Sequence record: MK054204.1
Length of the DNA stretch: 17,195 bases
Strand: one strand, 5' to 3'
Of the stretch, positions 3,455 to 16,900 are shown piece after piece. The position numbers were made by a program, and so were the translations under genes. Every line of letters begins with the position of its first letter. Position 1 is the first letter of the stretch. The notes beneath the pieces were generated by a model that was not told where the DNA came from, searched no databases, and worked only from the letters and a program-made list of their open reading frames with translations.

Positions 3455-3477
3455 AANAGGAAAAAATTNATNNTGAC

Positions 3478-4031: not shown

Positions 4032-4323
4032 ACTTGGTCAATAGGGGCTTATCGCTAAGCTTTTTAAACCCCTCCAGTTCTGAATTCAGAATCTGAATTT
4101 GTTTAGAGTTCTCTTTAATTTTAGCATATAACGTNCNNCCTTCNTTGTANANCTCTATGTAGCCTTNNTCNTTNANNATNCNNANNTGNCTTAGCACNGT
4201 NGCATAGCTCAAAAGCAGTGNGTGAGAGATGAGAGAAGCAGAGAGTACGTAGTTTTCCACAATAAGCTCTAAGATTTTACGCCTTAGTATCTTAGCCCTA
4301 ATCTCATTAGCGTTATAAGTCAT
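3979..4323 (-). CDS. Winged-helix (ArsR-like) protein, SSV1 B115 homolog
   Basis: [34 protein letters not shown]; ATG at 4323 overlaps the C166 stop (ATGA); many Ns inside. Confidence 0.85.
4061..4075 (-). promoter_or_regulatory. T1/T2-like capsid promoter embedded in the B115 gene
   Basis: GGAGGGGTTTAAAAA about 30 nt upstream of the vp1 ATG; resembles the SSV1 vp1 promoter. Confidence 0.75.
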
Positions 4324-4820: not shown

Positions 4821-5052
4821 CCCTACCACCTCCTAAGATTAACCCGGCTATCAGACCCAAAATGATCGCAACGCCCCAAAAAAGCGGTAAGAAATTCATG
4901 AAAGTTAGGGTGAAAGTTGAGGCTATACCTACAAGAATCGCCGGTACTTTGCCCGCCATCTTGTATGTTAGTCCCATCATTCCTATGATAATAACGACCG
5001 CAATNACCGGCCCTAAACCNGTNNNTAANGCNANNNNNATTGCGTCCGTCAT
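4810..5052 (-). CDS. Small membrane protein, SSV1 B78 homolog
   Basis: 80 aa, three hydrophobic segments; lies between VP4 and C166. Confidence 0.82.
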   Translation of the reverse strand: MTDAXXXXLXXGLGPXIAVVIIIGMMGLTYKMAGKVPAILVGIASTFTLTFMNFLPLFWGVAIILGLIAGLILGGGRDGD

Positions 5053-7433
5053 TATTCCTCCCTCCCCATAAACCTATCNACNANNGTNTTNGCTAANAGT
5101 ANCGCTATNCCNANNANNAAGANNTANAAGATGTACCANGGTANTANCCCNANNTATGCAGTGGCGATTAGCCCCATAACCGCACCACCCGATGCACCCG
5201 CACTACCGCCGAATTTCCAACCTAGTAACGCGATAAGTACCGTAACCACAATCCCGATGATTTCCGCCCATGGTTGGTATTGAGAGAAATTGTAAAGTGA
5301 GGAGTTAGGCAATATGTTATTACTAAACGGCTTAGTGTAGTTGTAGTTAAGAGTAGTGGTATTCACTGTGGTGGTGCTGCTTACTGTAGTAGTATTTGAA
5401 ACGCTAATGTTTAGTATCTGATATGTAACGCCGTACCAGTCTATATCTACTAACTCATAAGGACTATAGGATAGTTTTAGCGTTACGCTTCCGAAACCGG
5501 AAGCGTTTGTGTAGCCCGTTACATATTGTGTCAATGTTGATGGGTTAGTCCCGATCAATATTATATATGCTTGGTTAGCCGTAGCACTTTGTAAAACGAT
5601 ACCGCTAACGAAGAACCAATTCAGTACAAGTTTCCCCGCACCGTAGTAGAAGCCTAATCCAATAACCGGCGAAGTGTTTGATATAGTTAATACACCACCC
5701 GCACTACTGCTTATCTGAACATAGTTACCCGTTATAATCTGAAACGTTAGCGTATTAACGCTATTATTAACGAATTTTAACCCGGTTAAGGAACTATTAA
5801 ACGGAATTAGATAGTTGTTCCCGTTTTGAGTGATTATTACTAGGCCGTCATTTGCGGACAACCAATACGCTTTGAACTGAACTATAGCGTTTGTAGTTAC
5901 CATTTTAGCATAAGCAAAAGCCAAAATAGTAGATGTTTGCGTAAACGCAGATTGAGTTACGTTAGCTACGGGGCTATTATAAGTGAATTGAAACGTTATC
6001 GTTATTGTTTGCCCTAATATCCCGATTTTAGGATAAGAAGTAACGAATAACACGGGGTAACTCTGTGCGGGCAATACTGTGAAACTACCGCTATAATCTA
6101 TCATTGATATTGGGCCTTCAGTTACGATTACTGTATAGTAATAAGTAGTAGGTACTTGGACTATAGGCGTAAAACTATAGGGTATCGGGTACGTAACACC
6201 GTTTATTGATACGTTAGCCCGCTCTGATACTGCCGTATAATAACCTAGATTTGAGGGATAACCTATAATGTTAGTTAAAGTGAAACTGATTGTTTGCCCG
6301 CTTAGATAAGTCCCGCTAGGCAAATTGACGCTAGGATATAGTGCATAGCCCTCAACAATTACGGGTATAGTTAGGTTGTAGTTTATCGTTACTTGAGATG
6401 TAACGATTTGAAGCCCTATGGTTACGTTTACGTACCATGTTGGTGGGTTACCTTCGATTGGCCCCGTGTAAAGTAAATATAATCCGTTTGACTTCCCTAA
6501 AATGTTAAAAGTGCATGCTAAGCCTTGTTGTATACCCGTTATTGTAAAGTTTTTCTGTGAAACTATGCCCGATATGCTATATAATGCACCTGAAATGTTT
6601 ACGGGATTCCCCGCACCCGCATAGGCCATTAAGAAATGATAGATGTTATACGATAATGCGAAATAACTAATAGTCAGTTGTGCCGTAACTTGTGTAAAAT
6701 ATTGATAACGCATTATCACCCACTGACCGTACCCAAAACCCGGCCCAATATTCTGAGCGTCAATAACATAATTACTATTTACGGTATTCAACGATAGGCC
6801 CGGTATTATTGAAAAAGTCTTTAGAGTACCGTTATAGTAATAAACGTAAAGTTGGTTTGAAGCGGGTAAGTACCAGAACCCTAAACCTATTTGTTGCCCA
6901 ACACTGATTGAGCCCACAGACACGTTTAACTCTTTCACACCGTCAAAGTATACAAATAACCTATACGTTGGGAAACTCCCTTTTTCCATATAAACCACAA
7001 TCCCATCGGAAGCGTAAGGTAATGCGGGTGCATAGCTACCCGTAAAGCCTGAAGGGAAATTTACACCGTAGCCTATGGCGATTGAACCGTAGGATCCGGT
7101 GTTGCTAGATGAAGCTAGCAACCATGTGACGTTTAGAGCGATTTGTGATGATGAAAGAGAAAGAGATACGTTATTACTAATATATGCTTGATTCGGCAAA
7201 ACTTGGAGGTAGTAAGTGTTGTATATCGAAACGTAAGTTGGGTTAAGCCAAGGTGCATTAGAGAGCGTTGAACCGTTAAGAGTTTTACTTACTGAACCCC
7301 CATTTACCGTTATAGTTTGAGTATAAACTCCCACACCGCTATTATTAGGCCCTCCTCCACCTATAAGTAAAGCTAAGGAGTTGAGAGAAAAAAGAGATAT
7401 AAAGAAAATAGCGAATAATAGTCCCCACTTCAT
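5052..7433 (-). CDS. vp4: Adsorption/tail protein VP4, SSV1 C792 homolog
   Basis: 793 aa; signal peptide; Asn/Ser/Thr/Tyr-rich beta-type body with many N-x-S/T sequons; C-terminal TM segments; first gene of the structural operon. Confidence 0.92.
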
Positions 7434-7456
7434 TAAGCGATAAAAAATTATGTGAG

Positions 7457-7470
7457 TTTATAAAGGGCCT
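7457..7470 (-). promoter_or_regulatory. T7/T8-like promoter for the vp4 operon
   Basis: AGGCCCTTTATAAA about 24 nt upstream of the vp4 ATG (leaderless). Confidence 0.8.
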
Positions 7471-7688
7471 TAGTCTATCAAACGCCATAGTAAGTCTATT
7501 ACTGCCTTACGAAATTTGGGGCTTAAGTACATTGCAATCCCTAAAGAGGCTAAAAAAATTGCTAAGGCAATTTCCGGAGCGTATTGAACATACCATGGAG
7601 GTGGCGAATAAGGTGGCGAATAAGGAAAAATAATTTTCCCCTGAACAGATGCATTTACTGGGCCGAAATTAATACCCGAGGATGACAT
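7470..7688 (-). CDS. Small membrane-anchored protein, C124-like (PPWY motif plus TM plus basic tail); candidate immunity protein
   Basis: 72 aa, PPPWYVQYAPEIALAIFLASLGIAMYL then KFRK; own BRE/TATA 23 nt upstream of the ATG. Confidence 0.65.
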   Translation of the reverse strand: MSSSGINFGPVNASVQGKIIFPYSPPYSPPPWYVQYAPEIALAIFLASLGIAMYLSPKFRKAVIDLLWRLID

Positions 7689-7693
7689 ATAAG

Positions 7694-7700
7694 AAAAAAA
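7694..7700 (-). terminator. Oligo-T (T7) terminator of the 302-aa gene transcript
   Basis: T7 tract 27 nt downstream of the stop. Confidence 0.55.
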
Positions 7701-7710
7701 GATTAACTTG

Positions 7711-7725
7711 ATAATATACTTTTTC
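7711..7725 (-). promoter_or_regulatory. Tx-like promoter for the 72-aa membrane protein
   Basis: GAAAAAG-TATATTAT about 23 nt upstream of ATG 7688. Confidence 0.55.
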
Positions 7726-7726
7726 G

Positions 7727-8635
7727 TTAGACAATATACACTAGAATTAATGGTGTTTCTGTGTAACTAAGTTGTAAGGTTCCCGATATTTGAGCACTAC
7801 TACTTGACGTGTAGGCATTCGCGGAAAATGAAGGGCTACTGGACAACCAAGCAAAAGCCCATGCATAATTACTACTAATATAATTATTTGCGATAGGATA
7901 GTTTGTAGCGTATTTTATAGTTTCATACCCTACTGCAGTAGCGGGACTTCCAATTATGTTAAATGATATTCCGCTAAAGGTTTCGTTAGGAATTGGGTAG
8001 AACAAAATTGATTTGTTCACTCCGCTCTGGTAATAACCGGGTGCCTCACCCATCACTAGAGCAGAATATGGAGTAAAACTGATTCCGGTATTATAGGTAT
8101 ATGAAAAACTTCCATCTGAGAATTGTGCAACTACATTACCGTTAGAAAGGTAAAGATATATGTTCATAGTTGTACCCGCGAACTGGCTATACGGATATTG
8201 ATATGATACCAATGGATGAGCGTTGTTATTTACCACCAGATACACAAAAAGTAGCACGTATTTCACACTTTGATTTTCCAATAAATCAACTCCCGCTTGC
8301 AAGAAAGTTGTGCTTGCCCCATTACCAATAGTATACGGTGAAAGAGCCACCCAAAAGGCATACATGTTATCATACCAGTATTCATTAGGATTATAATAAT
8401 ATGGTATTGAAGATGGGATTGGCACAGAGATTGAGGCATATGAAGCCGGTTGCACTTGACCGTTATTAGCAAACTCAAACACATACCCTAAAAGGTTTGA
8501 ATCAGTTGATGATGAAATTTGATTTATCGGTATCGGTGATGATGGCGGTATTATTACTCCTGCAATTGTTGGAGTTATTAAAAGCGATAGTAACGCTAGG
8601 GATAGGGTTAGAAGGGCTAGAAGGGACTTTCTCAT
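7727..8635 (-). CDS. Secreted protein at the SSV1 A291 position; putative G1 (eqolisin-like) glutamic peptidase, toxin candidate
   Basis: Signal peptide MRKSLLALLTLSLALLSLLITPTIA; motifs SNLLGYV, AFWVAL, FLQAGVD, ALVMGEAP; no C-terminal anchor seen. Confidence 0.7.
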   Translation of the reverse strand: MRKSLLALLTLSLALLSLLITPTIAGVIIPPSSPIPINQISSSTDSNLLGYVFEFANNGQVQPASYASISVPIPSSIPYYYNPNEYWYDNMYAFWVALSPYTIGNGASTTFLQAGVDLLENQSVKYVLLFVYLVVNNNAHPLVSYQYPYSQFAGTTMNIYLYLSNGNVVAQFSDGSFSYTYNTGISFTPYSALVMGEAPGYYQSGVNKSILFYPIPNETFSGISFNIIGSPATAVGYETIKYATNYPIANNYISSNYAWAFAWLSSSPSFSANAYTSSSSAQISGTLQLSYTETPLILVYIV

Positions 8636-8658
8636 TTGGAATAGAGGAAAAATAGAAC

Positions 8659-8672
8659 TTTACAAAGGGCCT
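8659..8672 (-). promoter_or_regulatory. T3-like promoter for the 302-aa secreted protein
   Basis: AGGCCCTTTGTAAA about 24 nt upstream of ATG 8635. Confidence 0.65.
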
Positions 8673-9048
8673 AACTAACGCAGATATTATGTTTTTTGCA
8701 AACATGGTCTAGGGTTGAATCAGTGTTTCTAAACTCCTTTTTGCATATGGGACAAGTCTTTGCATGCTCGGTGTATCGGATGTGTTGTTTCAGACTAACT
8801 GATGAAGAAAATGGCATTAAGCAAAGGGGACAGACGTAAGGCGATACTGCTTTACTTGTCAGTAACTTATAGAGATAACCGCTTTCATCTAACAACTGGG
8901 GGTTATGGATTAACGCTTTAACAATAGCCCTAATTATTCTTTTCTGTTCCGGCGTCAGACTGTGGTATCGTTCCAGTTCTTCTAAAGTCACGTGAATCGT
9001 AATCCCCTTATGGTTACTCCTCAGGTGCGTTTTACTGCCTGACTCCAT
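8671..9048 (-). CDS. Tandem C2H2 zinc-finger protein, SSV1 B129 homolog
   Basis: CPLC..HIRYTEH and CPIC..HVCKKH; ATG at 9048 after GGAGGG. Confidence 0.9.
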   Translation of the reverse strand: MESGSKTHLRSNHKGITIHVTLEELERYHSLTPEQKRIIRAIVKALIHNPQLLDESGYLYKLLTSKAVSPYVCPLCLMPFSSSVSLKQHIRYTEHAKTCPICKKEFRNTDSTLDHVCKKHNICVS

Positions 9049-9650
9049 TCCTATCCCTCCAACAGTAGTTGTAAAACGCACACTCTAGGCATTCACTATC
9101 AGGCTTAACTTTTTTCGGCGGTAAGATGTTTTCCTCAACTGAAATCCCGAAAGCGTTAGCCCTAGCCTCTAAGTCAGTCTCTGAATAATCACGTTTAATC
9201 TCTTCCACCCTACCATCCGCATACACGATTATTAAATACCCCGCCATAGCATTAGCCATTTCAATGTAATAGTTAAGTTGTCTGAGGTAGTTGTTGAGCC
9301 TAACGTTATCCAGTGATTGCTGATGCGTATACTTCAACTCGTAAACCGTTTGCTCTTCTTTGTCGTAAACGTCCACTTTGCCTACTATTTGAAACCCTAA
9401 AGCCGTCTTCCGTTCAACCCTCTTTTCAACCTCAAAGCCATGCTTTNCTAAGTATTGATTGCAAACGCATATGAAGACCTGAACCTATGTGCATCCTCAT
9501 TGTAGTTTGTAAATTCTGTTTTATTTTACCGTTATGTCTCATTAGAAAACTTTGTCGAAGGCATCTACTAAGCTCAGTAACCCAGATCGTCTTAGTATCG
9601 TTAGTAGTTATCATTTCATAATTATATAATATATCAATGAGTCTNCTCAT
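9032..9650 (-). CDS. cas4: Cas4-like (RecB-family, Fe-S) nuclease; apparent frameshift at N 9447 is probably artefactual
   Basis: Track ORFs 9432-9650 and 9032-9376 join on removing the N at 9447 (205 aa). Motifs RC, GSGLH, GKVD, YELK, QLNYY and CLECAFYNYC all present. Confidence 0.85.
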
Positions 9651-9946
9651 NNTTTNCTCGCCCTCTTATGCCTCCTAATCGTCAAAGTATTCCAACAAAC
9701 TACAAACGCCTCTATCACACTATCATAATAAATCATCGATGTGGGGGCAAAGTGCAATACTAAAATTGTTATAAGAAGTAACGTAGCTAAAGAAAATTTA
9801 TAGAACGCTAATCGCAAAGGCGTTTCAATGAATTTCCTNGCAATTGCATTAACCTCTCTCACTCCCTCAATTCTAAGCCCTAATACCGTTGTAAAATAAT
9901 CGTTAAAGTGCATACCATAGAATGCTAATAATTCCGCTATCATCAT
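9647..9946 (-). CDS. Membrane protein, SSV1 C102-like
   Basis: FNDYFTTVLGL...E.NA...LRLAFYKF pattern; ATGA overlaps at both ends. Confidence 0.78.
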   Translation of the reverse strand: MMIAELLAFYGMHFNDYFTTVLGLRIEGVREVNAIXRKFIETPLRLAFYKFSLATLLLITILVLHFAPTSMIYYDSVIEAFVVCWNTLTIRRHKRAXKX

Positions 9947-10074
9947 TCTCTCACCCTGAAGTANANATAGAAATATTCTAGCGTAAACTTGCTCTGCATA
10001 TGCCCACTAAGCAAATGCTCAACCACTTCCCTTCTTTTCCTAAATATACCGCCACAACGTAGACACTGATACAT
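9943..10074 (-). CDS. C2H2 zinc-finger protein, SSV1 A45 homolog (43 aa; not in the ORF track)
   Basis: Hand translation MYQCLRCGGIFRKRREVVEHLLSGHMQSKFTLEYFYxYFRVRE; TAATG and ATGA coupling to its neighbours. Confidence 0.88.
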   Translation of the reverse strand: MYQCLRCGGIFRKRREVVEHLLSGHMQSKFTLEYFYXYFRVRE

Positions 10075-10316
10075 TATTGACCCACCTCTAATTTACGTTT
10101 AATTGCCAACCTAACGCTCTTAGGTAACTTGTAAGTAGTAAATAGATAGCAATATACGAGATGATCGATATCGTACTTACTGTAAAAGTGTTGATTAAGC
10201 CTTATGTATGTATTATTGCAAACTGGACATTTATTTAGCACATGATTCCTTCGCGTATGTTGTTTCAATGCGAATAATCTAATCGTTGTGAAACCACAAA
10301 TAGGGCATCTAAACAT
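10074..10316 (-). CDS. C2H2 zinc-finger protein, SSV1 A79 homolog
   Basis: CPICG..LKQHTRRNH, CPVC..HFYSKYDIDH. Confidence 0.9.
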   Translation of the reverse strand: MFRCPICGFTTIRLFALKQHTRRNHVLNKCPVCNNTYIRLNQHFYSKYDIDHLVYCYLFTTYKLPKSVRLAIKRKLEVGQ

Positions 10317-10551
10317 TTTCCAAGTACCTCACTAATGCTTCTCTGATGAGCTCAGATTTTGTAATTTTTCTCTTGGACGCAATCATCTCTAGTTTCGCGT
10401 TCAACTCAGGCGGTAGTTTAAATGATATTACTTGCATTGTATCATATAACGTTAATTCTATTGTGCCATCATTCATCTTCACTTCGATCTTTCTATAAGT
10501 TTTTGCATAGGAGGGTCTCGGCAACTTGATATATTCAACCCTAGCCTTCAT
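10309..10551 (-). CDS. Ribbon-helix-helix regulator, SSV1 C80 homolog
   Basis: MKARVEYIKLPR start after GGTGA gives 80 aa; C-terminal VISFKLPPELNAKLE...KSELIREAL RHH signature. Confidence 0.9.
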   Translation of the reverse strand: MKARVEYIKLPRPSYAKTYRKIEVKMNDGTIELTLYDTMQVISFKLPPELNAKLEMIASKRKITKSELIREALVRYLENV

Positions 10552-10552
10552 C

Positions 10553-10714
10553 TCAATCACCACACTCACAATATTCAATTGCATGCTCTATAGTTTCTTT
10601 CAATTCCTCTAATGATTCAATTAGCTCTTTATCGCAAGGTGCGTTGCTTAATAGATCATCTAATTGTTGTTTAATATATGCTAACTGTTCTAAGTAAAAT
10701 TCAATATCAGTCAT
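10553..10714 (-). CDS. Hypothetical acidic coiled-coil protein (53 aa; not in the ORF track)
   Basis: MTDIEFYLEQLAYIKQQLDDLLSNAPCDKELIESLEELKETIEHAIEYCECGD; GAGGTGG/GAGG ribosome-binding site; fills the gap between A100 and C80. Confidence 0.75.
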   Translation of the reverse strand: MTDIEFYLEQLAYIKQQLDDLLSNAPCDKELIESLEELKETIEHAIEYCECGD

Positions 10715-10727
10715 TCCTCAAACCACC

Positions 10728-11048
10728 TCAGTGATATATGTTCCACAATAATTTCGCTATCTTTTTCAATATCTCTTCTCTCACACCTTCTATTACTTTT
10801 TCATTACTGCTAGTTCTATAAATTTCGTAAAGTTTGTAGATTTTGATTAGCAGATTTTTGACTCTTTCAAACTCCGGGTCTGTCTCTTCATAATTAATTT
10901 TGTTTTCTAGTTGAGTCTCGCCTTCTTGTGCGTTTATCTTTACGTATAGTTTATTGTACGGGGTTTTATCTTCAACCCTTACGGATTGGATAAAAAAATT
11001 GAATTGAAGTTCATCTTGGAGGATTTCCTTGTTTTGAACCTCCACCAT
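10728..11048 (-). CDS. SSV1 A100-like protein
   Basis: C-terminal KLYEIY...EEILKKIAKLL pattern; first gene of the T6-like operon. Confidence 0.65.
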   Translation of the reverse strand: MVEVQNKEILQDELQFNFFIQSVRVEDKTPYNKLYVKINAQEGETQLENKINYEETDPEFERVKNLLIKIYKLYEIYRTSSNEKVIEGVREEILKKIAKLLWNIYH

Positions 11049-11057
11049 TTTGGGGAA

Positions 11058-11120
11058 CCTCTATGTACGATATACATAGAGCAAATATTTAAACTTTATG
11101 CTATATAGCTATCGTACATA
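11058..11120 (-). promoter_or_regulatory. T6-like early promoter with operator-like inverted repeat
   Basis: AAAG-TTTAAATA box flanked by the 11-bp IR TATGTACGATA (11062-11072)/TATCGTACATA (11110-11120). Confidence 0.8.
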
Positions 11121-11163
11121 CAAGAACAATTTCTTATAAATTCGCATAAATGCTATATGCATA

Positions 11164-11493
11164 ATGAACATAGAGGAATACATGAAAACCGAGTTAACAA
11201 ACAAACTCATTTCAACTCCAATGAAACTATTACTTATAATCGGACTTCTTTACGAAGAAACGCGAGAATGGCCCGGAGTCTCAGAGATTTATACCCAAAT
11301 AAATAGAAACACCTATGTGTGGTATAATTGGCAAGATTTTTTCCTCCAACAAGAGTTGATAGAAATTAAGGAAACAAAATCTGCCGTCGGCTCAACAAAA
11401 AAGGTCGTAATACTGACGGAGAAAGGAAGAAAAATTTACGAACTATTAAAGGACTGTATGGACAGAATGGCATTAATTGAGAACGAGAAGTAA
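11164..11493 (+). CDS. Winged-helix (MarR/PadR-like) transcription regulator
   Basis: GVSEIY helix, wing ending VILTEKGRKIYELL; TTATAAAT box about 23 nt upstream (leaderless); divergent from the T6-like promoter. Confidence 0.75.
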   Translation: MNIEEYMKTELTNKLISTPMKLLLIIGLLYEETREWPGVSEIYTQINRNTYVWYNWQDFFLQQELIEIKETKSAVGSTKKVVILTEKGRKIYELLKDCMDRMALIENEK

Positions 11494-11506
11494 CGGGGTT
11501 TTGTTT

Positions 11507-11523
11507 AAAAAAGAAAAAAGAAA
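11507..11523 (-). terminator. Double T6 tract, likely terminator of minus-strand transcription
   Basis: TTTCTTTTTTCTTTTTT on the minus strand, just before the end of the convergent wHTH gene. Confidence 0.5.
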
Positions 11524-11803
11524 TATCTTTTTGGTAGGGAGGGGGGTAGGGGAGAACGGCGGGGCGTCAATTGTATAACACAGTACTTCTAACCCTACCC
11601 CTCTCAAGTACTTTATGTAAATGTTTCTTAATCACTGGCACCTTTGTTACATCTAATTCGTCTTCTGTTAGTTGTTTTTGATTCACTACACAGAATCTAT
11701 ATTATAATACTTAAAAAAGGATATGGTAGATAATAACAAGTATTACCCCATCTTTATCTTGAAAAGTTAAACAGAAGCAAAATCGGTATTATTATATAAA
11801 GTT

Positions 11804-12178
11804 TTATTTCTTTATATTACTGGTGTGATACCCAATTCCGAAGGGAATAAAGTCTCTTAGTCTGAATCTATTAATGTTGAACACCATCCTATCCTCTAGA
11901 TAACATTGAGCCAACTTAAGACACTGATGCACCTCCTCCAACACCTTTCTTGCTTTTTCATCCAAGATCATTATATCTGAATAAGGTATATGAACATGAT
12001 AACGGCCCTTACGAGGATTATAGACGGCGTAAAGCATCCAGTCAGTCCTATCCCTAAAAATCACCACAGACCCAACCGGGGTTATTGCCACCCAATTCAA
12101 GTTATCCCAATTGATATGTTTCGAAATACTAAAGCCGTGAGTCCTAATTATAAGCATTAACTGTTCTTGATTCTCCAC
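11804..12178 (-). CDS. Hypothetical protein, last gene of the replication-like operon
   Basis: GTG start after GGGTGAGGGG; overlaps the end of the 681-aa gene. Confidence 0.65.
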   Translation of the reverse strand: MENQEQLMLIIRTHGFSISKHINWDNLNWVAITPVGSVVIFRDRTDWMLYAVYNPRKGRYHVHIPYSDIMILDEKARKVLEEVHQCLKLAQCYLEDRMVFNINRFRLRDFIPFGIGYHTSNIKK

Positions 12179-14202
12179 TTCCCCTCACCCGCCTCCTCTA
12201 TTATATCCAGTTTTTTCAGGATATCCCTCCATAACTCTTGACTCCTAGGGTCTGTAGCTTGAACAGTATACTCTAATATCTTGCTTAACTCATCGTCAAT
12301 AATGATATCTTTACCCAATAGCTTCGATCTCACATAGTTTATCAACATTTCATCTATATCGTAGCTTGAATGGATTTCCTGATTCTCATCTATCTCCTCC
12401 TCCAATTCCGCGAGGACTTTCAACCCGTAATGTGATAAAGCCCATGAGAACTTCTTACCATCATAAGCTTTCCATAATAACCCCTTATCGTAAAGAGCAT
12501 CCAAGAGCTTTTTAGTTTCTTGTGTACTCATTTTGATAATTTGGGCAACCTCTGATGTTGTCACGTCCTTAGTTTCCTCATCTTTCTCTCCTTGTATAAA
12601 TCCGTGATCAAGCAACCATCTCAATAACTGCAAATCCCTTTCCGACAACTCCAGTGTTGTCAATATAATATCCTTCTTGAAATAACGCATCACAAAATTC
12701 ACATCTTCCTCTTTTACCTCTTCATGCCCGTACATAGACGCGGTAGCTCTGACTAAATTCCTTGTAATCTCCGTTGCACGATAGATGTTCTTAAAGTTGA
12801 TAAACTTCTTGAGGAGTTCGATAACCTTTAAACCTATAGAGTCCGTAAATACCGGGTCGTTGGGCCTCGTTTTTAACCAGACATATGCGATAAGCTTCAG
12901 TCTAGAAAACTTTTCATCGTCTATACTCTTCCTCATCAAGATTGTACTAATAATTTTTTCCTTGATACTCTCATCTTCTACCGGTGAAAGGTAGAGTTGG
13001 ATTGAACGATTAGTGATTTGATGGTCAACATTTGCGGTCACGTTAGTCGTGATAAAAGTTGGTTGTCCCGGGATCACTTTTTGTATTGTCTTTATTTCCC
13101 CGGTTTCAGTCTTTACCGGGACTAGCGTTGTTATTCTACCCTCACTCATTGCTTCCCTTAAATAGCTTACCCCTTCAACATTATCCAATTGTTCGATGAA
13201 CAATACCTTACCGTCTAATGTGCCGATATCGAGATACCCTAGACTCTCTTTTGTTATTCTTGTAACATTAAGAACAACCCAATCATCCACTCCATCATTC
13301 ATCTCATAAAACATCTTTAAAATAGATTTGATCGTTGAGGACTTACCTACACCGGAACTACCCGTTAAGATTAAGTGAACACGGTATATCCCGAAGAGCT
13401 TCTTTAACTGTGAGGAAATTACGCTCAGTAGCACCGCAACCTTAAGCTTCTCATTCCCTACGACTTCGGAAGCTCTCGAGAGGAAGAAGCCTAAGGGATC
13501 ACGGTTTATCTCCTCCCACTCTTCATACCTTTTCACCACCTCACGTACGTCTGTCCATTGTATATATTTTTCTGGTTCTATTCGTTCTAACCATACATCG
13601 AGAGCATCGCTAATTAGTTGCTTAGAGATATGTCTTTGGCCTCTGAACGTGTAAAGCTTCTCTACAATCTCTTTCTTATTCCTAATATAGTATATTGTTT
13701 TGCCCTCAACCTTATAGAAGTCCACAGTAGTCAATAGACTCAAAGTTTCATTCTTCTTTTTGGCCACAAGTTCAAATTGAGGAAGTTGAGGTAACTTGAG
13801 GTCTATAATTCTAGTACTGTCCTCAATTGTTCCAGCGAAACCATAGTATATTTCAAATTTTGTTTTGTTCTTACCCTTGATTATTATCATATTATCTTTA
13901 ATTTCAATATTTTCATCTTCAATTTCTTTCTCCTCTTCTGCTAAAAATTCTCCGGAAGTATTTGGAGAGATAGAGGAATTTGTGTCGTTTGTGTCGCTTT
14001 TGAATTTTTCTCGTGTGTCGCTTACTAAATTGGGCGACACAAACGACACATTTTCATTATACCCTTTCTGAACTTCCGGAGAATTTTTATCAAACGACAC
14101 TTCATTTTTTGAATTATTTTGTGTCGCTGAGTTATTATTTCCGTCTTTATTTTTCTTTAATTTTTCTTGGACAATCCTCCTAAGCGTTTCCCTATCAACC
14201 AT
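12157..14202 (-). CDS. MCM-like AAA+ ATPase with C-terminal winged helix (putative replicative helicase/initiator)
   Basis: Walker A GSSGVGKS; Walker B variant VLFIEQLD; LREAMSEGRITT; sensor-1 FITTN; NRS arginine finger; C-terminal TTSEVAQ...LYDKGLL wHTH. Confidence 0.75.
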   Translation of the reverse strand: MVDRETLRRIVQEKLKKNKDGNNNSATQNNSKNEVSFDKNSPEVQKGYNENVSFVSPNLVSDTREKFKSDTNDTNSSISPNTSGEFLAEEEKEIEDENIEIKDNMIIIKGKNKTKFEIYYGFAGTIEDSTRIIDLKLPQLPQFELVAKKKNETLSLLTTVDFYKVEGKTIYYIRNKKEIVEKLYTFRGQRHISKQLISDALDVWLERIEPEKYIQWTDVREVVKRYEEWEEINRDPLGFFLSRASEVVGNEKLKVAVLLSVISSQLKKLFGIYRVHLILTGSSGVGKSSTIKSILKMFYEMNDGVDDWVVLNVTRITKESLGYLDIGTLDGKVLFIEQLDNVEGVSYLREAMSEGRITTLVPVKTETGEIKTIQKVIPGQPTFITTNVTANVDHQITNRSIQLYLSPVEDESIKEKIISTILMRKSIDDEKFSRLKLIAYVWLKTRPNDPVFTDSIGLKVIELLKKFINFKNIYRATEITRNLVRATASMYGHEEVKEEDVNFVMRYFKKDIILTTLELSERDLQLLRWLLDHGFIQGEKDEETKDVTTSEVAQIIKMSTQETKKLLDALYDKGLLWKAYDGKKFSWALSHYGLKVLAELEEEIDENQEIHSSYDIDEMLINYVRSKLLGKDIIIDDELSKILEYTVQATDPRSQELWRDILKKLDIIEEAGEGKWRIKNS
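13942..14127. repeat. Nested inverted repeats plus GTGTCG iteron cluster (candidate replication origin)
   Basis: 18-bp IR at 13942-13959/14072-14089 and 17-bp IR at 13981-13997/14034-14050 share centre 14015.5; seven GTGTCG/CGACAC copies. Confidence 0.85.
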
Positions 14203-15909
14203 TTAGGCCACCTCTAAACCCATCAACCTCTTCACGTTAGCATAACCGAACCTCTTATCAATCAAGTAAATTGTTGCATTGTCTTGCGGACCACGGATAG
14301 CCCTCCCTATCGCTTGTTTAACCTTAATTATAGCCTTCTCATATAATACAGTCCATTTGAAACTATTAGGATCTTTGTTCACCCTTTTCACAACTACTTC
14401 AATCATCTTGTCCAAGTAAGGGTCTTTGTACTCCGGCAGAGGTAGACCAACAACGAATATTGCCTTAATCCTACTCCTTCCTTGATCGTCTAAAACTTCA
14501 ATTCCTTCACTTAATTTCCCACCCGCAACTGCGAAAATTATTGAACCGTTAGGCAACTTTTTTACCCTATCAAGCACATCCGGTCTAACATCTTCGAAAA
14601 ACGAATCCATAAACAGATATCTATAAGCCTCTAACTCCTCGTAACTCGGTAAAATAACTAAGTTTAACCCGTCTTTTGAAGTATATTGCCTAATAATCTG
14701 AGCGACTTTTTGCCTATACTCTTTCCTTTTCACTTTGATATACTCCACATTATCCTCAAGGTAGATTTTCGCCCCATTAAAGTGGTTACTTAGAGACGTG
14801 GAGTTCCATAGGTTTAGAGCGTTGATGTACTCAAAGTTGTTGAGACCCCATACGGTTTTGATATAATCCTTTGAGGGCATCGTACCGCTCAAAAGAATAT
14901 ACCTATAATTATTTAGTTGAGATAGCCACAACGAGGGGTCTGCGGGCATCGTTTTAATATATTCTCCATTCTGTGTATCCCTTTCAATATAATAATCATC
15001 TTTTTTTGCCCACGCTTTATTTACTGCTTTGAACTTTGCTTGTAGTTCCTCATCTAAATACCCGGTATAGGAAAAACCGTTATCCGGATCCTTCACAAAT
15101 TCCCTGAATTCCTTAACTACTTTCTCCTTTACTCTCTCAGGATCCAAACCCTCAATAATGACTTTACTAAAGTACCTCTCTATCTCTTTCACCGTAAGCG
15201 TTATACTATTAATATTAAAGTCGTCAAGGTTATGTGCCTCATCAAAAATTATTATATCAAAAAGATCCTCATCCGGTTTCCTAATACCTAAGAAGAAATA
15301 GATGTAACTATATATCCTAATATCCGCCGTATTACCATCGATTAGGTCTCTAGCACATATACTATATTTCCTTCCATCTACATTGATTTCATTGTCCCTG
15401 AACCAGTTAGCGGTACCTTTTATCCCTACTTGTTTTAACATAGCGTTAAGCGTGTTTGTCACTGTAATCGTAAGTCTCCCTACTTCTTCTTCCATTTCAC
15501 GAAGTCTGTATCTACAGAAAGTTAAACTATCAGGGTCATAACATTTAGGGTTGAGATACTTCCTTTCTATAAACTTTTTATGCATTGTTACATGTTCTAT
15601 ATCGTCGACTTCTTTTGCACATTTTGTGCACCATAAAACGTACGGCTTCTTCATGACCTTGCAATATTCTCCTTTCCTCATAAGCCCGCCGAAGCTCATA
15701 CCCAACTTGTTTGCGTCCCTTTCCCAACTACTATATTGGCTTATGGTTCTGACATAAACGTAACCTTGCTTCTCCAGACGTCGCAACGTCTCCAACGCTA
15801 TAATTGTTTTGCCGGTTCCCGTTGGAGCATTAATAACTACACTGCGACCGTTGCTTAGAGCTTCTACGGCTTTCTTTATAATAACTTCTTGATAATCCCT
15901 AAGTATCAT
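14203..15909 (-). CDS. XPD/Rad3/DinG-family SF2 helicase
   Basis: Q motif LRDYQ; Walker A APTGTGKT; Cys-rich insert; DEAH; LLSGT; LSEGIE; VGLP; motif VI KQAIGRAIRG. Confidence 0.92.
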   Translation of the reverse strand: MILRDYQEVIIKKAVEALSNGRSVVINAPTGTGKTIIALETLRRLEKQGYVYVRTISQYSSWERDANKLGMSFGGLMRKGEYCKVMKKPYVLWCTKCAKEVDDIEHVTMHKKFIERKYLNPKCYDPDSLTFCRYRLREMEEEVGRLTITVTNTLNAMLKQVGIKGTANWFRDNEINVDGRKYSICARDLIDGNTADIRIYSYIYFFLGIRKPDEDLFDIIIFDEAHNLDDFNINSITLTVKEIERYFSKVIIEGLDPERVKEKVVKEFREFVKDPDNGFSYTGYLDEELQAKFKAVNKAWAKKDDYYIERDTQNGEYIKTMPADPSLWLSQLNNYRYILLSGTMPSKDYIKTVWGLNNFEYINALNLWNSTSLSNHFNGAKIYLEDNVEYIKVKRKEYRQKVAQIIRQYTSKDGLNLVILPSYEELEAYRYLFMDSFFEDVRPDVLDRVKKLPNGSIIFAVAGGKLSEGIEVLDDQGRSRIKAIFVVGLPLPEYKDPYLDKMIEVVVKRVNKDPNSFKWTVLYEKAIIKVKQAIGRAIRGPQDNATIYLIDKRFGYANVKRLMGLEVA

Positions 15910-16111
15910 GTTCCACCACCAGTGTGGCTTCTAGGGAAAAACTAATCTCGTATACCTTTGTGCCCGTAAAGATCAACAGTTTACCGTTGTCCCAACACAC
16001 CATTTTCGCTTTAACCTTATCGCCGTTCTCCAACCAAACTTCCTTGTCCTTTTCACACTCCCCGTTAAGCTCATTCACATATTTCCCATCCCTTATTTTT
16101 ATTACTGTCAT
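15899..16111 (-). CDS. Small beta-rich hypothetical protein (70 aa)
   Basis: ATG at 16111 after GAGGTGA; overlaps the helicase start. Confidence 0.7.
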   Translation of the reverse strand: MTVIKIRDGKYVNELNGECEKDKEVWLENGDKVKAKMVCWDNGKLLIFTGTKVYEISFSLEATLVVEHDT

Positions 16112-16126
16112 GAGAAAAATCACCTC

Positions 16127-16133
16127 AAAAAAA
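16127..16133 (-). terminator. Oligo-T (T7) tract directly after the stop of the 167-aa ORF
   Basis: TAA-TTTTTTT on the minus strand; Sulfolobales terminate at oligo-T tracts. Confidence 0.5.
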
Positions 16134-16637
16134 TTATGAAGATTTGTAAAGTTTCCTTACCAACGCCCCGCCGTTGCTTCCAATAACATACTCCAGCTTT
16201 ATGATATCGCCCTCCTTAATCTTACCCGCATTAACGTTTTTCCTTATAAATTCATAGCTCCCGGGAGATAGTCTGATTATCACACCATCGTTACCCCTTT
16301 CCTCCATTATCTTTGCCAATTCATCGGCACTGTAGACTTTGGGGATTAGATCCTTGCCTATTACCCTACCCGTCTTCGGGTCTTTTTTAGGAACCTCTTC
16401 CTTGTTAACAACATCGGAGAACATCCCTTCAAGCGGAATTGCTACCATTTCGTAACGTATTGTCTTAAACTGTTTTCCGTCCTTGGTTGTTCCCGTTATT
16501 TCCCTAGGTTCCAACAAACTCTTGAATTGTACTATGGCTTCACCGTAAGAGCCGTCCTCTGACGTTGGTGCTAACTTCACGACCAGAGTAGGTTGCCTTT
16601 CATCTATCTCTTGGAAATTAAACTTCATCTCTTTCAT
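16134..16637 (-). CDS. Hypothetical protein, possible OB-fold ssDNA-binding protein
   Basis: 167 aa, beta-rich, C-terminal GKIKEGDIIKLEY; ATGA-coupled to the RHH gene. The function is inference only. Confidence 0.6.
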   Translation of the reverse strand: MKEMKFNFQEIDERQPTLVVKLAPTSEDGSYGEAIVQFKSLLEPREITGTTKDGKQFKTIRYEMVAIPLEGMFSDVVNKEEVPKKDPKTGRVIGKDLIPKVYSADELAKIMEERGNDGVIIRLSPGSYEFIRKNVNAGKIKEGDIIKLEYVIGSNGGALVRKLYKSS

Positions 16638-16828
16638 GCCTTAGCACCTCCTACTGCTTTCGCCACTTCGGCTTTCTCTTTTGAAATATACCCCCTTGCG
16701 AGGGCTTGTTTGATCAAAAAAATAATTACTTCTTGTCTTGATTCCCACCCCTCAGATTTCCATAATTGATCGAATGTTTGAAGGATGGGTTTTTCCACCT
16801 TTACGGTTATTATGATTGTCTGTTCCAT
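16634..16828 (-). CDS. Ribbon-helix-helix (CopG-like) regulator
   Basis: ATG at 16828 after GAGGAG; IIITVKVEKPILQTFDQLWKSEGWESRQEVIIFLIKQAL fits the RHH pattern. Confidence 0.8.
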   Translation of the reverse strand: MEQTIIITVKVEKPILQTFDQLWKSEGWESRQEVIIFLIKQALARGYISKEKAEVAKAVGGAKA

Positions 16829-16832
16829 TTCT

Positions 16833-16900
16833 CCTCTATGTACGATATACACAATACAAGTATATAAACTTTATGCTATATGTATGACGTACATATAGCA
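16833..16900 (-). promoter_or_regulatory. Early promoter of the replication-like operon, paralog of the T6-like promoter
   Basis: AAAG-TTTATATA box flanked by TATGTACG (16837-16844)/CGTACATA (16888-16895). Confidence 0.8.

What the first reader, a model, noticed from the sequence alone, without database searches (positions are those of the whole stretch)
13942..14127. Symmetric iteron-rich structure inside the MCM-like gene: candidate replication origin
Seen: perfect 18-bp IR TAAAAATTCTCCGGAAGT (13942-13959/14072-14089) and perfect 17-bp IR TGTGTCGTTTGTGTCGC (13981-13997/14034-14050). Both have centre 14015.5, with exactly 21 nt between outer and inner arms on each side. GTGTCG/CGACAC occurs seven times (13982, 13991, 14015, 14035, 14044, 14095, 14121), one at the centre, and an AT-rich tract follows. 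All of this lies in the low-complexity N-terminal linker of the protein, where coding constraint is weak. Established: lambda ori iterons lie inside the initiator gene O; fusellovirus origins are poorly defined. Inference: this is the origin recognised by the 681-aa protein, possibly through its wHTH.
Basis: partly seen in the sequence, partly recalled or inferred. Interest (0 to 1): 0.88.

Follow-up and report, generated by a model that had tools for sequence, protein, structure and literature searches.

The report
Palindromic repeat cassette inside viral helicase gene
A symmetric DNA repeat structure sits inside the start of an MCM-like helicase gene of an archaeal spindle-shaped virus. It is kept in every close relative while its sequence changes in matched pairs, so it is a real DNA signal and the best current candidate for a replication origin in a virus family where no origin has been mapped.

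Summary
The window is the complete genome of SSV12 (MK054204). Two perfect concentric inverted repeats share centre 14015.5, and all seven GTGTCG hexamers of the genome lie within 145 bp.

The same architecture sits in the first ~300 nt of the homologous gene in ASV1, SSV7, 13 hot-spring metagenome contigs and the A. hospitalis W1 element. An analogous palindrome of 9-bp-spaced units sits there in plasmid pSSVi, a Sulfolobus sp. S-194 element and a Yellowstone SSV. The shorter SSV9 A460-type homologs and one S. islandicus L.D.8.5 element lack it.

Each lineage uses its own hexamer (GTGTCG, GTTACG, GCACCA, GTGCCA, GTGTTA, GTGGCA, GCATCA and others). Fifteen of the 17 inner pairs show changes on both sides, and there is no G-U pair. 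Selection therefore acts on DNA dyad symmetry inside a translated, disordered linker.

The protein folds as an MCM-family helicase and matches the large putative replication protein of pSSVi. The cassette is most likely the origin or helicase-loading site of this accessory replication module (confidence about 0.5).

- The wHTH does not co-vary with the hexamers.
- The cassette survives as an orphan, with two alleles per genome, in SSVs that lack the gene.
- The related module of SSV9, which has no cassette, is dispensable.

The parts
13942..13959 (.). Outer palindrome, left arm (TAAAAATTCTCCGGAAGT)
   Evidence: Perfect 18-nt inverted repeat with 14072-14089. The core AAATTCTCCGGAAGT is conserved in ASV1 and most metagenome relatives. 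L201 and L192 carry changed but still complementary versions.
14072..14089 (.). Outer palindrome, right arm (ACTTCCGGAGAATTTTTA)
   Evidence: It is removed by a 51-bp in-frame deletion between CAAACGACAC direct repeats in provirus M.04.0.13.SSV, which regenerates the inner palindrome.
13981..13997 (.). Inner palindrome, left arm: two GTGTCG units 9 bp apart (13982, 13991)
   Evidence: Perfect 17-nt inverted repeat with 14034-14050, concentric with the outer pair. Fifteen of 17 pairs show changes on both sides across 9 lineages, and 96% of cells are paired.
14034..14050 (.). Inner palindrome, right arm: two CGACAC units (14035, 14044)
14015..14021 (.). Central extra copy GTGTCGC, which can pair with 14034-14040 over a 12-nt loop
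   Evidence: (I5). A central copy that co-varies with the arms is present in M03027, ASV1, L193, L194 and L204. It is absent or degenerate in SSV7, L191 and L201.
14091..14127 (.). Flanking pair of units (CGACAC at 14095, GTGTCG at 14121) forming a small separate inverted repeat
   Evidence: In SSV14 these two copies are replaced by a GCACCAC-type unit. In M03027 they stay GTGTCG while the inner arms are GTTACG, which shows mosaic exchange.
14101..14170 (.). AT-rich tract beside the cassette
   Evidence: 75.7% A+T, in the top 1.1% of 70-nt windows of the genome.
13888..14145 (-). Low-complexity, length-variable N-terminal linker coding region (about codons 20-105) that hosts the cassette
   Evidence: Every length difference seen among homologs that stay colinear with the gene keeps the frame: the 33-bp modules, the 51-bp deletion and the 228-bp duplication.
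12157..14202 (-). Gene for a 681-aa divergent MCM-family helicase with a C-terminal wHTH, homolog of pSSVi ORF735
   Evidence: AlphaFold2 model of residues 101-681 has pLDDT 82, and the top 50 Foldseek PDB hits are all MCM. It is 38.6% identical to pSSVi ORF735 over 65% of the query. Precomputed Pfam hits on homologs: PF27228 on most, PF01978 (TrmB wHTH) on the pSSVi-type group. The start at ATG 14202 is supported by protein-level conservation of the first ~19 codons.
14203..15909 (-). Upstream Rad3/XPD-like SF2 helicase gene (context; not always linked to the cassette)
   Evidence: Pfam Helicase_C_2, ResIII and DEAD, and NCBIfam rad3. It is absent from pSSVi and from the A. hospitalis integrated element, which still have the MCM-like gene and a palindrome.

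Best explanation
The structure is a cis-acting DNA cassette. It is a nested, concentric palindrome built from hexamer units spaced 9 bp apart, with extra units and an AT-rich tract beside it. It is written in frame into the disordered N-terminal extension of a divergent MCM-family helicase gene. Some fuselloviruses share this gene with pSSVi-type integrative plasmids.

It most likely serves as the replication origin or helicase-loading site of this accessory, plasmid-derived replication module. In that model the dyad, as duplex or as an extruded cruciform, positions two helicase assemblies head to head, and the neighbouring AT-rich DNA opens first.

Shown:
- the structure exists;
- its position and architecture are conserved across the longer members of the gene family;
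- its pairs change in a compensatory, strictly Watson-Crick manner;
- the region is translated;
- the protein has an MCM fold;
- the protein is homologous to the large pSSVi protein.

Inferred:
- that the cassette is an origin;
- that the MCM-like protein acts on it;
- that cruciform or dyad geometry, and not a protein reading each hexamer, may be what is recognised.
For: 1. Conservation of architecture with sequence turnover. Concentric outer and inner inverted repeats sit in the first ~120-460 nt of the gene in SSV12, SSV14, ASV1, L191, L193, L194/195/198/199/202, L201 and L204, and in the cassette of the gene-less M03027. SSV7 and L222 keep the inner palindrome but have degenerate outer arms. 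Lineage-specific hexamers are GTGTCG, GTTACG, GyACCA, GTGTTA, GTGCCA, GTGkCA, GyATCA and GTGGTr.

2. Covariation on alignment A6. The inner helix has 17 pairs; 15 show a change on both sides and 96% of cells are paired. There are no one-sided (G-U type) changes in 35 pairs. None of 500 shuffles reached the observed values on four of the five measures (24/500 for further pair types). Slid controls pair at 31-49% against 88.6% observed.

3. The feature extends to 38%-identical homologs with unrelated repeat sequences. pSSVi carries a palindrome at 482-600 with CCCCGG x2 in each arm. Sulfolobus sp. S-194 carries the same type. A Yellowstone SSV carries TCCCCTAAA x3 / TAGGGGAAA x3.

4. The protein is a plausible replicative helicase or initiator. 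It has an MCM fold. It is the only large ORF apart from the integrase in the 5.7-kb plasmid pSSVi. From my memory of Wang et al. 2007, pSSVi replicates autonomously. In the stretch of A. hospitalis W1 between the two integrase fragments, about 4.8 kb, it is the only large gene besides the integrase.

5. The cassette is an island kept between two deletions in the 11-kb Mutnovsky SSVs. It is nearly identical to SSV12 across ~320 bp, while the core genome is 92% identical.

6. An AT-rich flank is present.

7. No fusellovirus origin has been mapped, so nothing known contradicts this (PMC6080066).
Against: - No replication data exist for this element.
- The module is accessory. Most SSVs lack it, SSV9's A460 homolog has no palindrome, and an SSV9 variant lacking the whole region still forms plaques (PMC6452263). 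SSV12 must therefore have, or be able to use, another origin.
- Orphan cassettes persist without the MCM-like gene in two lineages. This is unexpected for an origin that needs a cis-encoded initiator.
- No DNA-reading part of any encoded protein co-varies with the hexamers. The wHTH helix is invariant. The B129-type zinc-finger protein is 100% identical between genomes with different alleles.
- GC skew shows no switch at the site; in the window it tracks gene orientation.
- M.16.12.SSV carries a recombinant cassette with mismatched inner arms, and M.04.0.13.SSV lacks one outer arm. It is unknown whether these proviruses are functional.
Confidence: 0.5

Rival explanations
1. The cassette is a specificity or incompatibility cassette used in conflicts between co-resident replicons. 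Arrays, including orphan arrays, either capture an MCM-like helicase supplied in trans by another SSV or by a pSSVi-like element (satellite-like parasitism), or titrate it (iteron-type incompatibility, a decoy). Diversifying selection then produces the many hexamer alleles.
For: Orphan cassettes occur in genomes without the gene, each time with two different alleles: GTTACG plus GTGTCG in five small Mutnovsky SSVs, and GTGCCA plus GCATCA in an Acidianus fusellovirus contig. The cassettes are mosaic in SSV14, M03027 and L223. The SSV12 cassette and copy B of M.12.04.SSV are near-identical against a 92% genome background, which suggests recent exchange. pSSVi-type genes are common in Sulfolobales chromosomes.
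Against: No co-varying reader protein was found. Co-residence of orphans with a matching helper is not shown. This rival overlaps the main explanation, because it still requires the cassette to be the helicase's or initiator's target.
Confidence: 0.17
2. The cassette is a transcriptional operator or roadblock inside the long T5+-type operon. A dimeric or multimeric regulator binds the symmetric repeats and controls expression of the MCM-like gene and downstream genes.
For: Clustered dyad-symmetric repeats are typical operators. SSV promoters T5/T6 are known to carry direct repeats bound by a regulator (table in PMC6080066). SSV12 encodes RHH and zinc-finger proteins. In the small SSVs the cassette lies early in the single long leftward transcription unit.
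Against: The position is 110-260 nt inside a coding region and is conserved across unrelated contexts: the SSV operon, pSSVi and integrated elements. The hexamer alleles differ while the candidate regulator tested (B129-like zinc-finger protein) is identical. No promoter is evident.
Confidence: 0.12
3. The cassette is a structured element of the mRNA. A long hairpin about 110-260 nt into the coding region would modulate translation, stability or processing.
For: The RNA fold is very stable (-63 kcal/mol, z = -9.2). The region is transcribed as part of the gene. Covariation is the classic signature of RNA helices.
Against: There is not one G-U pair or one-sided change in 315 pair cells, although 39 cells changed on both sides. 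The 3-nt spacers between units are often non-complementary while the hexamers stay symmetric (L191, L192, L204). Extra unpaired copies co-vary in several lineages. There is no Rfam match. A 17-25 bp perfect stem within a reading frame would hinder translation of the gene that carries it.
Confidence: 0.08
4. The cassette is a recombination hot spot or a relic. The palindrome and repeats are by-products of slippage, hairpin-templated repair and unequal crossing-over in a tolerant linker, with no function of their own.
For: The region shows 33-bp module copy-number variation, a 228-nt tandem duplication, a 51-bp deletion between direct repeats and a recombinant cassette in M.16.12.SSV. Hairpin-templated correction could homogenise the arms without any reader protein.
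Against: Neutral processes do not explain why the same concentric two-tier architecture stays at the same place across homologs down to 38% identity, with unrelated sequences. They also do not explain its retention as an island between deletions.
Confidence: 0.08
5. The cassette is a miniature inverted-repeat transposable element inserted in frame.
For: It has terminal inverted repeats and a length of ~150 bp.
Against: There is no target-site duplication. A scan of 185,579 species genomes for the paired outer arms found a single contig, and that contig is itself fusellovirus-like. Apart from the gene-less cassettes, which still carry remnants of the gene's N-terminal coding sequence, the element is always at the same position of the same gene.
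Confidence: 0.02

Closest known systems
SV40 / polyomavirus core origin (site II) and the papillomavirus E1 binding site
   Same: The centre is a palindrome made of short repeated units in inverted pairs (four GAGGC pentamers in SV40; two plus two hexamers here). An AT-rich tract lies beside it. The same genome encodes an AAA+ hexameric helicase. Extra copies of the unit lie outside the palindrome.
   Different: The helicase here belongs to the MCM clade and not to SF3. No separate origin-binding domain that reads the units has been identified. The units differ completely between close relatives. The element lies inside the helicase's own coding region. An outer second tier of inverted repeat is present. 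This comparison rests on my knowledge of those systems and was not tested here.
Bacteriophage lambda ori (iterons inside the initiator gene O) and iteron plasmids
   Same: A repeat cluster plus an AT-rich region lies within a weakly constrained linker of the replication protein's own gene. Alleles are lineage-specific, as with the ori/O specificities of lambdoid phages. Copy number of the repeats varies.
   Different: Lambda iterons are direct repeats read by the N-terminal domain of O, which co-varies with them. Here the core is a nested palindrome, and no co-varying protein segment was found.
Origin of the Sulfolobus plasmid pRN1 (stem-loop next to the replication gene)
   Same: It is a crenarchaeal extrachromosomal element in which a ~100-nt stem-loop-forming palindrome linked to the rep gene is the proposed origin. 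It belongs to the same ecological group as pSSVi and pSSVx.
   Different: By my memory of the literature, the pRN1 element lies downstream of orf904, whose product is a primase-polymerase plus SF3 helicase. Here the element is inside the N-terminal coding region of an MCM-like gene that has no primase domain.
pSSVi ORF735 and its internal palindrome (NC_013777, 482-600)
   Same: It is a true homolog of the gene (38.6% identity). The palindrome has the same position in the gene and the same two-tier design, with two 9-bp-spaced units per inner arm.
   Different: The sequence is entirely different (CCCCGG units, GCGAAATTGTCAAC outer arms). The context is a plasmid, with no Rad3-like helicase upstream. 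I found no paper in the searchable library that describes this palindrome.
Proposed 'Tori' stem-loop of Lassen SSV10 (PMC6080066)
   Same: It is an iteron-rich region with direct and inverted copies next to the integrase gene of a fusellovirus, and it has been suggested as an origin. A Tn5 insertion inside a repeat abolished function. The position resembles that of the orphan cassettes in the small SSVs.
   Different: The sequence is unrelated (ATACTACGTTACTAC units), there is no MCM-like gene, and there is no concentric two-tier palindrome.

Membership tests
Iteron-type / palindromic replication origin | Cluster of repeated short units far above chance | tested here: met
   All 7 genomic GTGTCG copies lie within 145 bp; p is about 2e-12 for the span.
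Iteron-type / palindromic replication origin | Adjacent AT-rich, easily melted tract | tested here: met
   14101-14170 is 75.7% A+T, in the top 1.1% of windows. The enrichment is modest.
Iteron-type / palindromic replication origin | Linked gene for an initiator or replicative helicase | tested here: met
   The host gene has an MCM fold and is homologous to the large pSSVi ORF735. Orphan cassettes without the gene also exist.
Iteron-type / palindromic replication origin | Repeat sequence co-varies with the DNA-reading part of the initiator | tested here: inconclusive
   The wHTH helix is invariant across alleles. One N-domain residue (H191 or its equivalent) tracks GTG- versus GCA-type arrays, but GTTACG arrays occur with H, R and N.
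Iteron-type / palindromic replication origin | Supports autonomous replication; initiation maps to it | not testable with these tools
   This needs an ARS assay, 2D gels or marker-frequency data.
Conserved functional palindrome (selection for dyad symmetry) | Compensatory changes keep complementarity across relatives | tested here: met
   Fifteen of 17 inner pairs changed on both sides and 96% of cells are paired. None of 500 shuffles matched the observed values on four of five measures. Slid controls pair at 31-49%. Independent per-sequence detection of concentric inverted repeats agrees.
MCM family (for the 681-aa protein) | Curated sequence-model match | tested here: not met
   Pfam MCM scores 20.6 bits against a cut-off of 23.3, over the P-loop only. 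A profile search of PDB sequences finds no MCM.
MCM family (for the 681-aa protein) | Fold: beta-rich N-terminal domain, AAA+ core and C-terminal winged helix | tested here: met
   The AlphaFold2 model has pLDDT 82. The top 50 Foldseek PDB hits are all MCM, with E from 1e-11 to 3e-8 and ~370-660 aligned columns. TM-scores are only ~0.35, as expected when domain orientations differ.
Miniature inverted-repeat transposable element | Target-site duplication and dispersed copies in host genomes | tested here: not met
   No duplication flanks the arms. The paired outer arms occur in one fusellovirus-like contig only, among 185,579 species genomes.
Known structured RNA family | Match to an Rfam covariance model; G-U tolerated in helices | tested here: not met
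   The only hit is a chance-level snoRNA match (19.5 bits against 40). There are no G-U pairs in 315 cells.
Archaeal chromosomal-type origin (ORB / mini-ORB boxes bound by Orc1/Cdc6) | ORB consensus boxes in inverted orientation around a duplex-unwinding element | not tested
   I did not have a verified ORB consensus to scan with. The lineage-specific hexamers argue against one fixed host-protein motif.

The most novel reading that the evidence does not exclude
The cassettes are exchangeable 'replicon identity' modules in a community of fuselloviruses and pSSVi-like satellites. Gene-less SSVs keep one or two orphan cassettes of different alleles so that they can use, or sabotage, MCM-like helicases supplied in trans by co-resident elements. 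This would be an archaeal counterpart of satellite origins and of iteron incompatibility. Sequence turnover would be driven by inter-element competition and CRISPR pressure, while hairpin-templated repair keeps the dyad perfect.
Probability: 0.2. Interest if true: 0.85.

Novelty: new variant of a known kind. Interest (0 to 1): 0.68.

Why it matters
No replication origin of any fusellovirus has been mapped (PMC6080066), and how these model archaeal viruses replicate is an old open question.

This work identifies a precisely delimited ~190-bp element with unusually strong comparative evidence for DNA-level function. It is tied to a previously unclassified MCM-fold helicase family shared with the tractable 5.7-kb plasmid pSSVi. 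The question therefore becomes directly testable by ARS assays, footprinting and 2D gels, using natural allele variants, natural orphan copies and natural deletion or recombinant forms as ready-made controls.

It is also a clear case of a cis-element overprinted on a translated disordered linker, where the peptide sequence is dictated by the DNA signal.

In addition, it corrects the annotated start codons of both helicase genes in the public record.

Tried and rejected
- GC and AT skew: in this window they follow gene orientation and show no switch at the site, so they are uninformative.
- Degenerate pattern TTTGTNNCGTTTGTNNCG on viral contigs: too unspecific, and the hits are chance.
- Single-protein locus search in IMG/VR: found only ASV1 and SSV7.
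- Profile search of genome contigs with A4: found nothing, although the protein search later showed chromosomal homologs.
- Sequence-based classification of the 681-aa protein with Pfam, NCBIfam and PDB sequence profiles: no significant family. Only the fold search resolved it.
- MITE hypothesis: rejected.
- Rfam: no family.
- wHTH as the hexamer reader: rejected, because its recognition helix is invariant.
- Residue 191 (the 'R-X-ISK' motif) as a specificity determinant: suggestive for GTG versus GCA arrays, but broken by GTTACG arrays. It remains a lead only.
- Other copies of the outer-arm motif in the genome: none within 0-1 mismatch.
- Literature searches for earlier descriptions: found none. 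The original pSSVi paper and the ASV1/SSV7 paper are not in the searchable library, so priority cannot be excluded.
- The sigma-70 promoter scanner was not used, because it does not model archaeal promoters.
Full report
**1. What the window is**

The 17,195-bp window is identical to MK054204.1, the complete circular genome of Sulfolobus spindle-shaped virus SSV12. It came from cell-free virus preparations from Mutnovsky volcano, Kamchatka (Pauly et al. 2019, PMC6452263). The finding lies in a long leftward operon. A Rad3/XPD-like SF2 helicase gene (14203-15909, minus strand) is followed directly by a 681-aa ORF (12157-14202, minus strand).

**2. The observation**

- The outer inverted repeat is 13942-13959 / 14072-14089, 18 nt and perfect.
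- The inner inverted repeat is 13981-13997 / 14034-14050, 17 nt and perfect.
- Both pairs have centre 14015.5, with 21 nt between the tiers on each side.
- The seven GTGTCG/CGACAC hexamers are the only ones in the whole genome.

The genome-wide count is not unusual (7 against 3.3 expected). Confinement of all seven to 139 nt is highly unusual (about 2e-12; none of 2,000,000 random placements). The window holds 14 12-mer inverted-repeat seeds within 150 nt, against a mean of 0.2 and a maximum of 3 in Markov simulations. The segment folds with z about -9.5 as DNA and -9.2 as RNA. The flanking tract 14101-14170 is 75.7% A+T, in the top 1.1% of windows.

**3. The region is translated**

GenBank starts the CDS at GTG 14040. 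However, the first ~19 codons from ATG 14202 (MVDRETLRRIVQEKLKK) are conserved as protein, with many synonymous differences, in ASV1, SSV7 and all metagenome relatives except L201. Every length difference seen among homologs that stay colinear with the gene keeps the frame:
- the 33-bp modules;
- a 51-bp deletion in M.04.0.13.SSV;
- a 228-nt tandem duplication in M.12.04.SSV.

**4. Comparative test: symmetry is kept while sequence and peptide change**

- ASV1 is about 69% identical at the DNA level across the module. It has the same outer arms (AAATTCTCCGGAAGT) and an inner inverted repeat of different sequence, TGTACCATTTGCACCAGT / ACTGGTGCAAATGGTACA, concentric with the outer arms.
- SSV7 has TGTTACGGTTGTTACGGTG / CACCGTAACAACCGTAACA.
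- Thirteen hot-spring metagenome contigs encode 53-70%-identical proteins and include the N-terminus. The ten examined for inverted repeats all carry the structure at the same place, nine as exact repeats and L192 in mismatched form.
- The A. hospitalis W1 integrated element also carries it.
- The unit is GTGTTA in L191, GTGCCA in L193 and L204, GCACCA in L194-L199, L202 and L205, GTG[TG]CA in L201, G[CT]ATCA in L192 and GTGGT[AG] in A. hospitalis.
- In L201 and L192 the outer arms have also changed, again in a complementary way: TTCTGCAGAAGTAT / ATACTTCTGCAGAA, and AGGTTTTCGAAGT / ACTTTGAAAACCT.
- Within the Mutnovsky population a second allele exists. M.03.0.27.SSV has GTTACG in both inner arms and in the centre copy.

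I aligned nine lineages (A6) and counted pairs.
- The inner helix has 17 pairs. Fifteen show changes on both sides, and 96% of cells are paired.
- The whole structure is 88.6% paired, against 31-49% when the partners are slid.
- None of 500 shuffles reached the observed values on four of the five measures (24 of 500 for further pair types).
- The structure string was taken from SSV12, which can inflate the slid control. Independent detection in each sequence found concentric inverted repeats in the eight lineages that retain recognisable outer arms.
- There is not one one-sided (G-U type) change among 35 pairs and 315 cells, while 39 cells changed on both sides. This favours selection on double-stranded DNA symmetry, or a DNA hairpin or cruciform, over an RNA helix.

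Meanwhile the peptides encoded by the arms differ freely: NVSFVSP, NVPFAPV, NVTVVTV, NVLNVLV and others.

**5. Beyond a simple hairpin**

- Units within an arm are identical or nearly so in every lineage and are spaced 9 bp apart.
- A third, central copy co-varies in several lineages: SSV12, M03027, ASV1, L193, L194 and L204.
- Additional copies lie outside the palindrome in 33-bp tandem modules. Their number varies from 1 to 4 between near-identical contigs.
- In L191, L192 and L204 the 3-nt spacer between units is not complementary, although the hexamers are.

This pattern looks like concerted evolution of iterons. The outside copies do not always match the inner ones. SSV14 has a GCACCAC-type unit upstream of a GTGTCG palindrome. 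M03027 keeps GTGTCG outside a GTTACG palindrome. L223 carries three different unit types in a row. The cassettes are therefore mosaics built by recombination.

**6. The host gene**

Sequence models do not classify the protein. The Pfam MCM match is below threshold, and NCBIfam and PDB sequence profiles give nothing useful.

An AlphaFold2 model of residues 101-681, built on a 32-sequence alignment, has mean pLDDT 82. It shows a beta-rich N-terminal domain, an AAA+ core and a C-terminal winged helix. Its top 50 Foldseek matches in the PDB are all archaeal or eukaryotic MCM subunits, with E from 1e-11 to 3e-8. TM-scores are low (~0.35), as expected for multi-domain chains with different domain orientations. 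'MCM-like' is therefore supported at the level of fold.

The protein is 38.6% identical, over 65% of the query, to ORF735 of pSSVi (NC_013777). ORF735 is the only large gene apart from the integrase on that 5,740-bp integrative plasmid. From memory of Wang et al. 2007 (Virology), which I could not retrieve, ORF735 was described as a large replication protein without a primase-polymerase domain, and pSSVi as autonomously replicating and packaged by SSV1 and SSV2.

Homologs are common in hot-spring metagenomes and in Sulfolobales chromosomes. They carry the precomputed Pfam domains PF27228 (MTBMA_p00010_2nd) and TrmB-type wHTH. In A. hospitalis W1 the gene lies between two integrase fragments about 4.8 kb apart, with only small ORFs (one a zinc-finger protein) beside it.

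**7. The palindrome follows the longer members of the gene family**

- pSSVi has a 119-bp near-palindrome at 482-600, which is 139-257 nt into ORF735. Its outer arms are GCGAAATTGTCAAC and each inner arm has two CCCCGG units 9 bp apart.
- An integrated element of Sulfolobus sp. S-194 has the same type.
- A Yellowstone SSV (MK054236) has TCCCCTAAA x3 facing TAGGGGAAA x3, 93-180 nt into its gene.
- The shorter, more distant A460-type homologs (SSV9, the Nymph Lake SSVs and L206-L214) lack both the N-terminal extension and any such palindrome. One pSSVi-type element, in S. islandicus L.D.8.5, also shows none.

A two-tier palindrome of 9-bp-spaced units in the first ~300 nt of the gene is thus an ancestral, conserved companion of the longer MCM-like genes, across sequences that share no repeat similarity.

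**8. Evidence that complicates the origin reading**

(a) The module is accessory. Most fuselloviruses lack it. Pauly et al. also report an SSV9 variant that deleted 2823-9693 and still forms plaques. That deletion removes the integrase, the helicase, A460 and the divergent promoter region often proposed as the origin. SSV9's module, however, carries no cassette.

(b) Seven 11.3-11.9-kb Mutnovsky proviruses have lost window regions 9554-13908 and 14361-16897 but keep the 450-bp island between them. The island includes a 90-aa remnant of the helicase C-terminus and a 121-198-aa ORF made of the linker.
- Five of the seven carry two tandem cassettes 228 nt apart, one of allele GTTACG and one of allele GTGTCG.
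- M.16.12.SSV is a left-A / right-B recombinant with mismatched inner arms.

(c) An independent case is a fusellovirus-type contig binned with Acidianus hospitalis. It has VP1/VP3, the D-335 integrase N-terminus and a B129 zinc-finger gene on the same piece. It carries two orphan cassettes of alleles GTGCCA and GCATCA in opposite orientations, about 890 bp apart, with no MCM-like gene on the 3,038-bp piece fetched.

(d) I found no protein segment that co-varies with the hexamers.
- The wHTH recognition helix is nearly invariant.
- The B129-like zinc-finger protein is 100% identical between genomes with different alleles.
- One residue of the N-terminal domain (H191) tracks GTG- versus GCA-type arrays, but fails for GTTACG arrays.

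**9. Interpretation**

It is shown that this is a DNA-level, cis-acting element under strong selection for dyad symmetry, overprinted on a translated linker of an MCM-fold helicase gene shared with pSSVi-type plasmids.

I infer, with confidence of about 0.5, that it is the origin or helicase-loading site of that plasmid-derived replication module. It would work like the palindromic cores of polyomavirus or papillomavirus origins, or like lambda ori inside gene O. A dyad, possibly extruded as a cruciform at 80 degrees C in supercoiled DNA, would position two helicase assemblies, and the AT-rich flank would open.

No reader domain co-varies, and the pairs are strictly Watson-Crick. Recognition of geometry, and not of each hexamer, is therefore a real possibility. 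In that case homogenisation of units would come from hairpin-templated repair and slipped pairing, and rapid sequence turnover perhaps from CRISPR pressure. Pauly et al. show that variable genes of long SSVs are heavily targeted.

The orphan cassettes with two alleles are unexplained. They suggest use or titration of helicases supplied in trans, which is rival 1 and the novel case. An operator, an mRNA structure, a neutral recombination hot spot and a MITE are less likely, for the reasons given under each rival.

**10.

The claim that the symmetry is a DNA signal in a weakly constrained linker is strongly supported. The origin reading is plausible and strengthened, but unproven. Recognition through the wHTH is not supported. 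The claim should be narrowed to the origin of an accessory module, not the origin of fuselloviruses.

**11. Novelty**

The kind of element is known: a palindromic or iteron origin in or beside the initiator gene. New here are:
- the specific cassette;
- its two-tier design;
- its placement inside an MCM-fold gene of archaeal viruses and plasmids;
- its allele diversity;
- its orphan copies.

I found none of these described in the literature I could search. The original pSSVi paper and the ASV1/SSV7 paper were not searchable, so earlier mention of the repeats cannot be excluded.

Noticed in passing
window 12157-14202 and 14203-15909 (minus strand): Both public CDS annotations appear to start too late. 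The MCM-like CDS is annotated from GTG 14040, but the 54 codons upstream, from ATG 14202, are conserved in relatives. The Rad3-like helicase is annotated 14203-15654, but the ORF runs to 15909, and Pfam ResIII/DEAD (the Walker A region) match residues 2-58 of the 568-aa ORF.
   Followed up: partly
window 14013-14183 (+ strand): A 56-aa plus-strand CDS is annotated here in several SSV records. It lies antisense inside the palindrome and encodes a T-rich, junk-like peptide. It is probably an artefact of a region that is open in several frames.
   Followed up: no
window 11062-11120: This is the only other long palindrome in the genome (29-nt arms, 76% complementary, 1 nt apart). It lies in the divergent intergenic region 11049-11163, which corresponds to the T5/T6 promoter region often proposed as the SSV origin. 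The region is absent from the small Mutnovsky SSVs, and its counterpart is absent from the viable SSV9 deletion variant.
   Followed up: partly
L011 (MK054209) 10665-11120; L002 (MK054211); L007 (MK054215): Three natural variant forms of the cassette exist. M.12.04.SSV has a 228-nt tandem duplication with two alleles (GTTACG, then GTGTCG). M.16.12.SSV has a left-A / right-B recombinant with mismatched inner arms. M.04.0.13.SSV has a 51-bp in-frame deletion between CAAACGACAC repeats, which removes one outer arm but regenerates the inner palindrome.
   Followed up: yes
L223 (A. hospitalis MAG contig JAWDOK010000020) 1520-1661 and 2406-2547: Two orphan cassettes of different alleles (GTGCCA and GCATCA) lie in opposite orientation on a fusellovirus-like contig, with no MCM-like gene on the 3,038-bp piece fetched. 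Upstream of the first lies a run of modules with three different unit types: TAACAC, TGCCAC and GTGCCA.
   Followed up: partly
L224 (Lassen SSV10, KY563228) locus 480-720: The 'Tori' region next to the integrase of an SSV without the MCM-like gene is an unrelated iteron cluster, with ATACTACGTTACTAC in direct and inverted copies. The published non-functional Tn5 insertion at 4468 falls inside a repeat, and the functional insertion at 4545 falls between repeats.
   Followed up: partly
L004 (SSV7) 1501-3552: The SSV7 homolog is split into two ORFs, B471 and B192. The second carries the wHTH and the C-terminal domain.
   Followed up: no
Metagenome loci L194-L199, L202, L205; proteins P0001-P0049: The N-terminal arrays show length polymorphism. 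Their 33-bp (11-codon) modules are present in 1-4 copies between near-identical contigs, and family proteins range from 635 to 926 aa. One protein (P0035) appears to carry three full cassettes.
   Followed up: partly
window residue H191 of the 681-aa protein (codon at about 13630-13632): In the motif F[RK]..[RK]-X-[IV]SK, just before a helix of the N-terminal domain, X is N in all GCA-type arrays and H in nearly all GTG-type arrays. GTTACG arrays occur with H, R or N. It may be a specificity contact or merely shared ancestry.
   Followed up: partly
L011 11188-11460 and window 14203-14361: The small SSVs retain a 90-aa ORF that is the C-terminal remnant of the Rad3-like helicase (Pfam Helicase_C_2, E = 3e-11). 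Only its last ~50 codons align to the window's helicase gene at DNA level, and it starts about 30 bp from the integrase start.
   Followed up: partly
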